A DNA stretch of 64,000 nucleotides from Setoptus koraiensis (lineage: Eukaryota; Animalia; Arthropoda): the NCBI GenBank assembly GCA_048013815.1, contig CM106585.1, positions 6,448,001-6,512,000 on the forward strand, in the 5' to 3' direction. Positions 1,234-4,441 of the stretch are shown piece by piece. Position numbers and translations under genes: made by a program. Within the stretch, counting starts at the first letter, position 1. Every line of letters begins with the position of its first letter. The notes under the pieces are model-generated. The model saw only the letters and a program-made list of their open reading frames with translations, had not been told where the DNA came from and did not search any database.

Positions 1234-1824
1234 ATGCCTCGTGTTCCAACAGTACACAGTAAGACCTATGTTACCCCTAGACGTCCTTATGAAAAAGAAC
1301 GTCTCGATCAGGAATTGAAACTAATTGGTCAGTTCGGACTTCGTAACAAGAGAGAAGTATGGAGAGTCAAATACACTCTGGCAAAGATCCGTAAGGCTGC
1401 TCGTGAACTTCTTACATTGGAAGAGAAGGATACCAGACGTTTGTTTCAAGGTAACGCATTGTTGCGTCGTCTTGTCCGAATTGGTGTGTTAGACGAGAGC
1501 AGGATGAAATTGGATTACGTCCTTGGTCTGCGAATTGAGGACTTTCTAGAGCGCCGTCTACAAACTCAAGTGTTCAAACATGGTCTAGCTAAGAGTATAC
1601 ATCATGCCCGTGTTCTTATCAGGCAGAGACACATTCGCGTTAGGAAACAAGTTGTTAACGTACCATCGTTTGTTGTTCGATTAGATTCTGAGAAGCACAT
1701 AGACTTCTCATTGAACTCACCATTCGGTGGTGGTCGCCAGGGACGTGTAAAGAGGAAGAATTTACGTAAGGCGGCAAGTGGCGAGGGTGCCGGTGGGGAT
1801 AATGCTGATGATGAAGAAGAGTAA
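1234..1824 (+). CDS. RpS9: 40S ribosomal protein S9 (uS4), intronless
   Basis: 196-aa ORF with hallmark motifs [37 protein letters not shown] and [32 protein letters not shown]. Confidence 0.99.
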
Positions 1825-2386
1825 ACTAATGAAAGTGAAAATCATTTGATATGAATATACAATAATTAAAGCTGTAATAGACACTGGCAATGACTAGTTT
1901 GACCGTACGATTTATCATCGCGAACATCACATCCCCATGAGAAAATATGTGCACTATTTTGCTTATCTTTCCATGGTGTGTTGTCCGTCTGTAAATTGTA
2001 CGTAGGACATCATTGTGATTCTTTACAGATTAACATAATCGACTCCAACTATACGTTCATAGTTATTTTTGGTCCTCACTCAACCAAGAACTACATATTA
2101 CACAATTCCAAGATGGACTGTCAAATGAAATCGTCTGTGATAGTGGCATGCCACATTAATATGCTGAAGCAACAGTTTCGGGTGCTGCAAGACTCAATCA
2201 ATTTTAGTTTATCTGAAATATGAAACTTATTACAAGAAAGAATATAGATCCTATATGCCTCATGGGTATATAATAAGCCTTTGGCGCCTTTCAATTAATC
2301 TTCTTCGTGCTTACAATACTAATGGTTCGGTCGCTAAAGCATCGTTAGAGCTTATAAGAGCTTCTCTGATAGGCTACTAAACGCAA

Positions 2387-3333
2387 TTATAACTCATCTT
2401 TCTTGGCTTTCTTGGCTTTCTTCATACTTTTCACCATCTGTTGATCGACTAGATACTCTCCAAGCGAAGAACCGTCAGAGCTCTCTGCTCCTTGAAGAAT
2501 TGTCAACCAGGTATATAGCTCGTTGATGGATTCCACTTGTTCCGTGAAAAATTTGCCTTCAACGAAATCAATGAGATGCCAATCTTGACATTTCTGTTCG
2601 GCAACATTGTGCAGGTGATGGAGCTTAGCATATACGGTTTTTTCCAATTTAACTGCATCGTCCAATGCATGTTTAACATTGTCCCATGAGTTTGAAGGTG
2701 ATACCTGAGCGCCGACGGTGCCAACGGTACCATTACGTTGGTTGACATAATCGACTAGTAGTTGCGCGTGGCCATACTCCTCCTGCGATTGATGCCTAAA
2801 GAAATCGCCGAATCCTGGACGAGCTCTGCGCGGGTTGTTGAAATGGCCAGCCTAAGTTCGGTGTGATAGATCGGAGGAATTTTAGATTATATTGACAGGA
2901 TTCAAAATGTACCCAGAGAGTCTTAGAAATGCGACATACCATATTCATATAGACCATACTAGCGTGGAGTTCCTCATTGATTTGTTCGTTCAAAGCTTCC
3001 AGACATGAATCATGCAATTCATAGAAGTCTAGTATGGGCTTCTTTACACCTGAATTTATGAAGTTATCAATGATATCGCCACCATAGTGCGGCACATGTT
3101 TTAATATGGATATTGGACCAGAATTTTGAGAAGAGTCTGAACTGGTGTAAGATTACTGAGATGAAGCTTTAGACTGCGATGCTATCACACCAAAGTTGTG
3201 ACAGCGCGTTAAACAGATCAATCATGTCTACATCCCATCTGAATAGTATCAACTTACCCTCACTTGTCGTTAACATCACCAAAGCTAAAGCTATTGTGAT
3301 ATTCACCAATCCTTGCTTCAATAGAGAGGTCAT
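2387..3333 (-). CDS. Secreted-type ferritin, 3 exons (3333-3258, 3136-2940, 2851-2387), ~245 aa, C-terminal KDEL
   Basis: Exon 1 encodes a signal peptide (MTSLLKQGLVNITIALALVMLTTSE) followed by GTAAGT. GT/AG introns join it in frame to NEQINEELHASMVY, QSQEEYGHAQLLVDYVNKRNG, LEKTV and FTEQVESI, which carry all H-chain ferroxidase residues. Confidence 0.93.
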
Positions 3334-4018
3334 TTTGATTGCTTTTTGAAATATTATTAAGATATTTTCTCCTTTGGCACTGTTATAAGGTTCTCAAAAT
3401 TCGCAATCTGATAAATATAGGAACACTAAGGCAATGTATGGTGATCTAGACTCGGTGGATGAAATAGTGGATCTAGATTTATACTATTCAATAAAATAAA
3501 GTATCTACGATCTAGTTCTGATGCTATAGCGCGATACTTTTAACATGTCTGATGATACAATAATTGGATTTAAGACGAAAAGAAAAAGTGCTGATGACTC
3601 TAGTTTTGCCGATAGTAGAGCTATCTTGGCGGATCACGCAGTTGACACAAAGTAATTATCGATCAATTGGATACTTATAATAGTTGATAGCATTAGTACT
3701 AATCACTATCGATTTATGTGGTAAGTTCAATGAGGGAAATCAACACTATTTACAATTTGCTATAGTACTTGTGTATACAATACATGGGCGGTATCATGAT
3801 CTGCATGTGCGAGAAGACTCATTAAGACGTCAATTGATTGATTGATAGAACCTCATATCAACAGTCGTTAGCAGACATCTAGAACAGACTCGTTGTTGAT
3901 ACAAATTTGATTAAGATCACCAAGATAACAGATAAGTTCGTGAACGCAGAAAGTTTTAGTTGATCCTTTCAATCACAGTCAATGTTAAGTGAAGAGCAAA
4001 CAAGTTGGAAATATCAGT

Positions 4019-4441
4019 TTAGTCGGCGTCCATGGCTTCATCTTCAACTTGGCCTCCATCTGTTGTATCTACAGTTTGGTCACCAGACGCGTACTTTCGA
4101 AGATATTCATCATCCGCCCAAATAGGTTTGGTGGATCCTTCTTTGATTCGCATGGGTTTGGCAAGACTAACTCTCACTGTTTTACCTAAAATTTCACCAT
4201 TGTCCATATTGTCAATTGCATCTGAAGCGTCCTCAGGTGCCTGGAATTCAACAAACGCAAATCCACGATGCTTCTGGCTCGCATAATCTAGAGGTAAGCT
4301 AATATCTATTATGTCTCCAAAAGGTTCAAACGACGACTTGAGCATGCTGGCGTCCACATCTTCGGCCAGTCCTCCGACGTAAACAGTCTTCTTGGTACTT
4401 GAATGATGTGCATCGCCAATAAGACTGTTTGACATATTCAA
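4019..4441 (-). CDS. PPIE: PPIE/Cyp33-like protein, RRM only (no cyclophilin domain)
   Basis: [14 protein letters not shown]...[27 protein letters not shown]...NLAKP-equivalent [23 protein letters not shown] matches the PPIE N-terminal RRM; the ORF stops after an acidic tail. Confidence 0.9.

What the first reader, a model, noticed from the sequence alone, without database searches (positions are those of the whole stretch)
2387..3333. Secretory ferritin ending in KKAKKAKKDEL: a candidate ER-retained ferritin
The spliced protein has an N-terminal signal peptide, an intact ferroxidase centre (E27/Y34/E61/E62/H65/E107/Q141 equivalents) and a basic extension ending exactly in KDEL-stop. Known arthropod secretory ferritins (tick FER2, insect Fer1HCH) are exported, and KDEL is the canonical ER-retrieval signal. 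This suggests iron storage retained in the ER lumen, which I do not know of in animal ferritins. The Lys-rich tail might also bind polyanions.
Basis: partly seen in the sequence, partly recalled or inferred. Interest (0 to 1): 0.72.

Follow-up and report, generated by a model that had tools for sequence, protein, structure and literature searches.

The report
Mite secretory ferritin ending in KDEL
A mite gene encodes an iron-storage protein (ferritin) that is sent into the secretory pathway and ends in the classic "stay in the endoplasmic reticulum" tag KDEL; the tag is kept in dozens of related mite ferritins, so it is probably functional, though no localisation experiment exists.

Summary
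A three-exon minus-strand gene (3333..2387) encodes a 245-aa H-type ferritin. It has a hydrophobic N-terminal signal sequence, all seven ferroxidase residues, one conserved cysteine pair, and the C-terminus KKAKKAKKDEL followed by a stop.

The tail is not chance. A congener (about 85% identical, same exons, same RPS9 neighbour) keeps KDEL-stop through synonymous changes. In the clade that includes Aceria tosichella, 47 of 55 sequences end in basic-x-[E/D]-L, which matches the published specificity of KDEL receptors. KDEL-like ends also occur in:
- house-dust mites (LDEL)
- Halotydeus (TDEL)
- a scorpion (KLEL)

They are absent from spiders, mesostigmatid mites, horseshoe crabs and cytosolic ferritins.

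- Iron storage by ferritin inside ER/Golgi is already known in insects, without KDEL.
- In canonical ferritin cages the C-terminus lies inside the shell. The tag may therefore act only on unassembled subunits.

I found no transcript evidence, because the RNA runs offered held none of this organism's reads. I found no paper describing a natural KDEL ferritin, and the scan had no earlier ferritin note. Verdict: a real and apparently undescribed variant of arthropod secretory ferritin, of moderate to good interest.

The parts
3258..3333 (-). Exon 1: start codon and signal sequence (aa 1-25 plus the first base of codon 26)
   Evidence: Hydrophobic core KD 2.94. Conserved exon in congener L003.
3137..3257 (-). 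Intron 1 (121 nt, GTAAGT...TTCAG, phase 1)
   Evidence: Same length in L003.
2940..3136 (-). Exon 2: mature N-terminal extension, Cys70, and start of helix A with ferroxidase E81 and Y88
   Evidence: Pfam Ferritin profile positions 2-21.
2852..2939 (-). Intron 2 (88 nt, GTATGT...CTTAG, phase 0)
   Evidence: Absent in the intronless orthologue L001, which aligns through the junction.
2387..2851 (-). Exon 3: helices B-E, ferroxidase E115/E116/H119/E161/Q196, Cys179, the basic tail and the stop
   Evidence: Pfam PF00210 at 8.5e-20..
2390..2422 (-). C-terminal tail KKAKKAKKDEL. KDEL codons are 2401..2390. The 9-nt unit AAGAAAGCC occurs twice (2422..2414 and 2413..2405).
   Evidence: The congener has one repeat unit fewer and keeps KDEL with a TTA>TTG Leu codon and a TAA>TGA stop.
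1234..1824 (+). Intronless ribosomal protein S9 gene, convergent with the ferritin. This is a conserved neighbour that marks positional orthology; it is not part of the ferritin function.
   Evidence: The same ferritin/RPS9 arrangement is in L001, L002 and L003.

Best explanation
The gene is this mite's orthologue of the chelicerate signal-peptide (FER2-type), H-type ferritin. Shown: it has an N-terminal hydrophobic signal sequence, an intact di-iron ferroxidase site, a conserved cysteine pair typical of a lumenal or extracellular protein, no IRE, and a C-terminus basic-x-[E/D]-L that is under purifying selection across the mite clade. Inferred: after entry into the ER, the C-terminal KDEL is bound by the KDEL receptor (ERD2) in the acidic cis-Golgi, and the protein is returned to the ER in COPI vesicles. 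Ferritin is thereby concentrated in the early secretory pathway. There it oxidises and stores iron delivered into the lumen, in insects by a ZIP13-type transporter. In effect the mites would add a canonical retrieval tag to achieve what insect iron cells do without one. Weaker variants in relatives (KEDL, KSEL, KVEL, xxDL) would allow partial escape, so the protein may be both an ER store and, in part, an exported carrier.
For: Gene model and KDEL-stop. Ferritin domain. Ferroxidase residues and cysteine pair (both Cys present in 64 of 80 rows; the second never without the first). H-ferritin fold of the orthologue (pLDDT 87.5; TM 0.86-0.89 to human FTH1). Positional orthologues next to RPS9 that also end KDEL. 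Clade survey: 45 of 53 database members end [ED]L. Tail profile: -4 is K/R/H in 40 of 47, -3 is free, -2 is E in 32 and D in 15, -1 is L in 47 of 47. This profile matches the experimentally derived receptor code: -3 any residue but Pro, -2 E>D, -1 L (Raykhel et al. 2007, PMC2140024; KEDL, KVEL, KTEL, QEDL and RTDL proteins were ER-localised). Background: only 4 of 268 ferritins without a signal sequence end [ED]L, and 3 of those are N-truncated secretory forms. Window versus congener: 58 synonymous-only against 31 amino-acid-changing codons, with KDEL kept through a synonymous Leu change and a different stop codon. Precedent for lumenal ferritin storage and ER iron import in insects: PMC4783870.
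Against: There are no localisation data for any of these proteins. There is no RNA evidence for the exon model. In native cages the E helices and C-termini are inside the shell (PMC8518560), and KDEL follows helix E directly in the model, so assembled 24-mers may hide the tag. Only 8 of 53 clade members fit the strict PROSITE pattern. Eight clade members lack the motif, including one sister pair, so it is dispensable in some lineages. Spiders, Mesostigmata and horseshoe crabs lack it. The receptor code was measured in mammalian cells, not mites.
Confidence: 0.55

Rival explanations
1. Assembly checkpoint. The KDEL-type tag is exposed only on unassembled monomers or dimers. These are retrieved to the ER until they enter a 24-mer. 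Closing the cage buries all 24 tags in the cavity (flip conformation), and the finished cage is then exported, like tick FER2.
For: The C-terminus lies inside native cages (PMC8518560). In most clade members the tail is only a median of 10 residues after the helix-E D motif, and KDEL abuts helix E in the model, which is too short to reach outside. The nearest characterised relatives are exported (tick FER2, PMC9885654). Masking of retention signals on assembly is well established for arginine-based signals of membrane proteins (general knowledge).
Against: I know of no precedent for a soluble KDEL cargo masked by self-assembly. A flop conformation that exposes helix E cannot be excluded. No data exist on the secretion of these mite ferritins.
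Confidence: 0.25
2. The conserved basic/acidic tail serves ferritin chemistry, for example four-fold-axis packing, phosphate or iron-core nucleation, or polyanion binding inside the cavity. Its resemblance to KDEL is incidental, and the protein is simply secreted.
For: The tail would face the cavity in a canonical cage. Most variants fail strict PROSITE. The motif has been lost in some clade members. Ferritin helix E already carries a D-K-[EDQ]-L-like motif in many species; for example, one cytosolic ferritin ends FDKEL.
Against: Conservation is strongest exactly at the very C-terminal positions -1 (L, 47 of 47), -2 (E/D) and -4 (basic), with -3 free. That is the receptor code rather than a helix or nucleation pattern (PMC2140024). 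The motif is an extension beyond the helix-E D-x-x-L motif, not that motif itself. It appears almost only in signal-peptide ferritins.
Confidence: 0.15
3. Annotation artefact. The real transcript uses another terminal exon or start, so the KDEL end or the signal peptide is not part of the protein.
For: No RNA reads could be laid on the locus.
Against: The congener has the same three exons, in frame, with the same ends. An intronless orthologue has one continuous ORF running from signal peptide to KDEL. Dozens of independently called proteins have the same architecture. One small contig, of a run only guessed to be RNA, runs unspliced from exon 3 through the stop to 2309.
Confidence: 0.04

Closest known systems
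Tick secreted ferritin FER2, and the signal-peptide ferritins of other chelicerates
   Same: H-type subunit with a signal peptide, an intact ferroxidase site and no IRE. It groups with chelicerate signal-peptide ferritins and apart from cytosolic ones.
   Different: FER2 is described as an exported haemolymph iron carrier (PMC9885654). The Mesostigmata, spider and horseshoe-crab homologues retrieved here have no [ED]L end. No named tick FER2 sequence was retrieved, so the tick FER2 C-terminus was not inspected directly.
Insect Fer1HCH/Fer2LCH secretory ferritin
   Same: It is targeted to the ER by a signal peptide, is disulfide-bonded, is loaded with iron in the secretory pathway, and accumulates in ER/Golgi compartments of some cells (PMC4783870).
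   Different: The insect system has two subunit types encoded by adjacent genes and no KDEL-type C-terminus (Gryllus ends PVLG). Here the window holds a single H-type gene and no second ferritin, and the protein carries a canonical retrieval tag.
Soluble ER residents with KDEL-type signals (PDI family, BiP; leaky cases such as MANF with RTDL)
   Same: A signal peptide combined with a basic-x-[ED]-L carboxy-terminus. The variants seen in the clade (KEDL, KVEL, KTEL, xxDL) are among those shown to give ER localisation (PMC2140024). MANF and CDNF show that KDEL-like proteins can also be secreted (PMC4731063).
   Different: Those are monomeric or small chaperones and enzymes with free C-termini. 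Ferritin is a 24-mer whose C-termini normally point into the cavity.
Human/vertebrate cytosolic H ferritin (FTH1)
   Same: Same fold (TM 0.86-0.89), about 35% identity, and the same ferroxidase residues.
   Different: It is cytosolic, has no signal peptide, is IRE-regulated, and has an acidic C-terminal tail without a retrieval motif.

Membership tests
Ferritin, H-type (Pfam PF00210) | Ferritin-like domain above the Pfam gathering score | tested here: met
   Exon 3 scores 71.6 bits against a cut-off of 24.5, E 8.5e-20.
Ferritin, H-type (Pfam PF00210) | Seven ferroxidase-centre residues (human E27, Y34, E61, E62, H65, E107, Q141) | tested here: met
   E81, Y88, E115, E116, H119, E161 and Q196 are present. 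They are invariant or nearly so in the 80 aligned relatives.
Ferritin, H-type (Pfam PF00210) | Four-helix bundle plus a short helix E | tested here: met
   The AF2 model of the intronless orthologue L001 has helices A-E and pLDDT 87.5. Foldseek top hits are human and mouse H ferritin, TM 0.86-0.89. The window protein itself was not folded, because a spliced sequence has no reference.
Ferritin, H-type (Pfam PF00210) | Assembly into a 24-subunit cage that mineralises iron | not testable with these tools
   Needs recombinant protein.
Arthropod secretory ferritin (FER2 / Fer1HCH type) | Cleavable N-terminal signal peptide | tested here: inconclusive
   A hydrophobic core is present in the window protein and across the clade (KD 2.9, clade median 2.8, against 0.6-1.0 for cytosolic forms). 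No SignalP-type predictor was run and no cleavage was shown.
Arthropod secretory ferritin (FER2 / Fer1HCH type) | Groups with signal-peptide ferritins rather than cytosolic ones | tested here: met
   ML tree: it is nested among chelicerate signal-peptide ferritins, and cytosolic tick and Limulus ferritins fall as outgroup. This was a quick search with SH-aLRT support only.
Arthropod secretory ferritin (FER2 / Fer1HCH type) | Lumenal-type cysteines (disulfide) | tested here: inconclusive
   The protein has exactly two Cys (70 and 179), and they co-occur in 64 of 80 relatives. The bond itself was not shown.
Arthropod secretory ferritin (FER2 / Fer1HCH type) | Export to haemolymph | not testable with these tools
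   No proteomic or localisation data.
Soluble ER-resident protein with a KDEL-type retrieval signal (PROSITE PS00014) | [KRHQSA]-[DENQ]-E-L at the extreme C-terminus of a protein that enters the ER | tested here: met
   KDEL is followed by TAA.
Soluble ER-resident protein with a KDEL-type retrieval signal (PROSITE PS00014) | Motif conserved in orthologues in the pattern the receptor reads | tested here: met
   47 of 55 clade sequences: -1 is L in all 47, -2 is E or D, -4 is basic in 40 of 47, and -3 is free. The congener keeps KDEL through synonymous changes.
Soluble ER-resident protein with a KDEL-type retrieval signal (PROSITE PS00014) | C-terminus accessible to the KDEL receptor | not testable with these tools
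   This is doubtful for assembled cages, because native E helices are buried (PMC8518560).
Soluble ER-resident protein with a KDEL-type retrieval signal (PROSITE PS00014) | ER localisation that depends on the motif | not testable with these tools
   Needs cell expression of the wild type against a tail deletion.

The most novel reading that the evidence does not exclude
The KDEL-type end is an assembly sensor. It retrieves only unassembled ferritin subunits. Closure of the 24-mer buries all the tags in the cavity and licenses export. This would be a soluble-cargo counterpart of the assembly-masked retention signals known for membrane-protein complexes, and an old feature of acariform, perhaps arachnid, secretory ferritins.
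Probability: 0.25. Interest if true: 0.8.

Novelty: new variant of a known kind. Interest (0 to 1): 0.56.

Why it matters
Arthropods place ferritin in the secretory pathway, but how cells decide between keeping it as a store and exporting it as a carrier is poorly understood. A ferritin lineage that has carried a canonical, selected ER-retrieval tag across many mite species gives a direct experimental handle on that decision: delete four residues and watch the protein. It also poses a clean structural question, namely whether a KDEL tag at a C-terminus that normally points into a closed cage can be read. Some of the species involved are crop pests (eriophyoid mites) or allergen sources (Dermatophagoides), where iron handling and secreted ferritins are of applied interest.

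Tried and rejected
- **RNA evidence.** The look-up of sequencing runs offered RNA runs only under a species label that seems to be a host or mislabel. Three runs of about 1.6 Gb each gave 0 reads. One 246-nt contig from a run only guessed to be RNA covers 2309..2554 unspliced, which is weak support for the terminal exon. Both tools are now at their caps.
- **IRE.** Rfam at E<=10 found no IRE in 2000..4200. The CAGUGC in the 5' UTR sits in a 12-nt loop with no C-bulge stem (z = -0.27). No IRE-like pattern lies upstream of the congener's start. IRE regulation is rejected.
- **Second (L-type) ferritin gene beside it, as in insects.** tblastn of the window found none.
- **Species identity.** Cluster look-ups returned no names for the window's or the congener's proteins. 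Only the placement is known: sister to the Aceria-type clade.
- **Literature.** Five full-text searches found no natural KDEL/HDEL ferritin. Subscription journals are not covered.
- **Chance or low-complexity artefact.** Rejected on conservation.
- **Folding the window protein itself.** Not done, because the spliced sequence has no reference and I did not type it in. The intronless orthologue was folded instead.

Full report
**What is there**

Reading the minus strand of 2300..3700 and translating the three open stretches gives the following gene:

| Part | Coordinates | Size / notes |
|---|---|---|
| Exon 1 | 3333..3258 | 76 nt |
| Intron 1 | 3257..3137 | 121 nt, GTAAGT...TTCAG |
| Exon 2 | 3136..2940 | 197 nt |
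| Intron 2 | 2939..2852 | 88 nt, GTATGT...CTTAG |
| Exon 3 | 2851..2387 | includes stop TAA at 2389..2387 |

Joined in a script, the CDS is 738 nt, in frame, and gives 245 aa ending KKAKKAKKDEL.

- Exon 3 matches Pfam Ferritin at 8.5e-20, and the end of exon 2 matches the first 20 profile positions.
- All seven ferroxidase residues are present (E81, Y88, E115, E116, H119, E161, Q196). They are invariant or nearly so in 80 aligned relatives.
- The first 25 residues contain a hydrophobic core. The best 10-residue Kyte-Doolittle mean is 2.94, against 0.6-1.0 in cytosolic tick and Limulus ferritins. No dedicated signal-peptide predictor was available.
- The protein has exactly two cysteines (70 and 179). 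They sit at two columns that carry Cys together in 64 of 80 relatives, and the second never appears without the first. This suggests a lumenal disulfide.
- There is no IRE.
- There is no second ferritin gene in the window.

**Is the exon model real?**

I could not get transcript evidence. The RNA runs offered carry a species label that is apparently not the mite; three of them gave zero reads. Only one 246-nt contig, from a run merely guessed to be RNA, covers 2309..2554 without a splice.

The model rests instead on comparison:
- A Logan contig (L003) from a close relative has the same three exons, with the same exon lengths and the same intron 1 length. It starts with a related signal sequence and ends KKAKKDEL-stop.
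- A much more distant orthologue on metagenome contigs (L001/L002, 49% identity) is a single uninterrupted 207-aa ORF running from a signal sequence to AKKDEL-stop. It aligns straight across the exon 2/3 junction.
- In all three loci the ferritin is convergent with an intronless RPS9 gene, so these are positional orthologues.
- The window's RPS9 protein is identical to that of L003.

**Is the KDEL more than chance?**

Yes, on four lines of evidence.

*Congener comparison.* Window versus congener shows 58 codons with synonymous-only differences against 31 with amino-acid changes. In the tail, Ser and Ala codons change silently, Leu is TTA against TTG, and the stop is TAA against TGA at the same place. 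The only length change is one in-frame 9-nt AAGAAAGCC (KKA) unit.

*Clade survey.* A profile word search recovered a tight clade of 53 database proteins (E <= 1e-70). It includes Aceria tosichella, an eriophyoid mite, and one protein labelled Olea europaea that is probably mite contamination.
- Nearly all have signal sequences, and 45 of 53 end in [ED]L.
- With the window, L003 and the full-length L001 protein added, 47 of 55 sequences carry the motif.
- Among those 47, position -1 is L in all, -2 is E (32) or D (15), -4 is K/R/H in 40, and -3 is free.
- This is the pattern measured for KDEL receptors. In a reporter system, -3 tolerated every residue except proline, -2 favoured E but accepted D, and -1 was L or F. 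Natural KEDL, KVEL, KTEL, QEDL and RTDL proteins were in the ER (Raykhel et al. 2007, PMC2140024).
- Only 8 of 53 fit the older strict PROSITE pattern.

*Wider distribution.* An exhaustive profile search of 1.84 billion representatives and a second word search extend the picture.

| KDEL-like end present | KDEL-like end absent |
|---|---|
| Dermatophagoides farinae and Euroglyphus maynei (…GKLSLDEL) | Spiders |
| Halotydeus destructor (TDEL) | Mesostigmatid mites (Dermanyssus, Tropilaelaps) |
| Scorpion Centruroides (KLEL) | Horseshoe crabs |
| Several unlabelled signal-peptide ferritins (ISKDEL twice, EKDEL, FDEL, KIEL) | Dinothrombium |
| | A cricket (Gryllus) |

*Background rate*.

| Group | End in [ED]L |
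|---|---|
| Clade | 45 of 53 |
| Other signal-peptide ferritins | 9 of 68 |
| Ferritins without a signal sequence | 4 of 268 (3 of these are N-truncated secretory forms) |

*Tree.* On a maximum-likelihood tree, window plus congener are sister to the 43-row Aceria-type clade, and the split uniting the 45 rows has SH-aLRT 99. This whole group sits among chelicerate signal-peptide ferritins, apart from cytosolic ones (quick search, so deep nodes are tentative). The motif is therefore ancestral to this mite clade. It is either old in arachnids with losses, or it was gained several times.

**Structure**

An AlphaFold2 model of the intronless orthologue (pLDDT 87.5) shows the signal helix, helices A-D and helix E (187-203). 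The last four residues, KDEL (204-207), form a coil directly after helix E. Foldseek places the model on human and mouse H ferritin at TM 0.86-0.89.

A profile search against PDB sequences aligns the family to a 170-residue ferritin chain (6kh0) up to that chain's penultimate residue. The tag is therefore an extension of about 7 residues in most clade members, and about 15 in this window.

**How it most likely works**

*Shown:* the sequence features above and their conservation.

*Inferred:*
- The protein enters the ER.
- Its carboxy-terminal KDEL is bound by the KDEL receptor in the cis-Golgi.
- The protein is returned to the ER, so ferritin is enriched in the early secretory pathway. There it stores iron imported into the lumen.

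Insects already keep iron-loaded ferritin in ER/Golgi compartments, with ZIP13-dependent loading, but without a KDEL (PMC4783870). The cell biology is therefore not new; the canonical tag is.

*The main complication.* In native cages the 24 E helices, and thus the C-termini, are buried inside the shell ("flip"). They turn outward ("flop") only when large C-terminal inserts force it (PMC8518560). With tails this short, assembled cages may hide the tag.

That leads to the main rival. The tag may retrieve only unassembled subunits, and cage closure may license export. This would reconcile the tag with the exported, FER2-like role of the nearest characterised relatives (PMC9885654).

A third reading is that the basic/acidic tail serves cavity chemistry and only resembles KDEL. 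It fits poorly with conservation concentrated at -1, -2 and -4 of the very C-terminus.

| Reading | Probability |
|---|---|
| ER-enrichment | about 0.55 |
| Assembly checkpoint | about 0.25 |
| Incidental tail | about 0.15 |
| Annotation artefact | about 0.04 |

**Comparison with the known, and novelty**

Membership in H-type ferritin is met on domain, catalytic residues and fold. Membership in the arthropod secretory ferritin group is met on phylogeny and is likely on signal peptide and cysteines. The sequence-level criteria for a KDEL-type ER resident are met, but accessibility and motif-dependent localisation cannot be tested here.

Five full-text searches found no description of a natural ferritin with a KDEL or HDEL end. 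The only eriophyoid genome paper that mentions ferritin refers to a whitefly salivary ferritin. The searchable library omits most subscription journals. The scan's own notes contain no earlier ferritin finding. Earlier notes on this genome call it a small mite genome, which agrees with the relatives found here.

I class this as a new variant of a known kind.

**Limits**

- The species is not identified.
- There are no RNA reads.
- The signal peptide was judged by hydrophobicity only.
- The tree was a quick search.
- The receptor code comes from mammalian cells.
- Many clade members are unnamed metagenome or SRA-assembly proteins.

Noticed in passing
window 1234-1824 (+); L001 4837-5409; L003 2585-3175: An intronless RPS9 gene lies tail-to-tail with the ferritin. 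The arrangement is conserved in a 49%-identical orthologous locus. The window's RPS9 protein is identical to that of the congener contig.
   Followed up: partly
window 2405-2422 (-): The extra length of the basic tail comes from a perfect tandem duplication of the 9-nt unit AAGAAAGCC (Lys-Lys-Ala). The congener has one copy.
   Followed up: yes
protein P0010: A mite-type signal-peptide ferritin ending KEDL is annotated as 'soma ferritin-like [Olea europaea]' on a 13.7-Mb record. It nests inside the Aceria-type clade, so it is probably mite (eriophyoid) contamination in a plant assembly.
   Followed up: partly
proteins P0289, P0268, P0306, P0059: KDEL-like ends occur outside the eriophyoid-type clade: the scorpion Centruroides vittatus (KLEL), the house-dust mites D. 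farinae and Euroglyphus (LDEL), and Halotydeus destructor (TDEL). Close astigmatid relatives end LDQL or LDSL, which suggests drift of the motif there.
   Followed up: partly
window 3355-3385 (-), 5' UTR: A CAGUGC hexamer, the IRE loop sequence, sits upstream of the start codon. It is not in an IRE-like stem, is not found by Rfam, and is not conserved in the congener.
   Followed up: yes
sequencing runs X11, X14, X15: Deep poly(A) RNA runs that share a species label with small DNA runs holding 54-78% of this locus contain no read of the ferritin. The shared label is therefore probably a host or sample label rather than the mite.
   Followed up: no
proteins P0028, P0032, P0003, P0023: A few clade members end KEEKN, KDKKD, KKDN or GKKD instead of [ED]L. 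P0028 and P0032 are sisters on the tree, so at least one real loss of the tag seems to have occurred. P0011 and P0013 carry KEDL/KEEL followed by 5-6 extra residues, which may reflect stop-codon loss or an assembly error.
   Followed up: no
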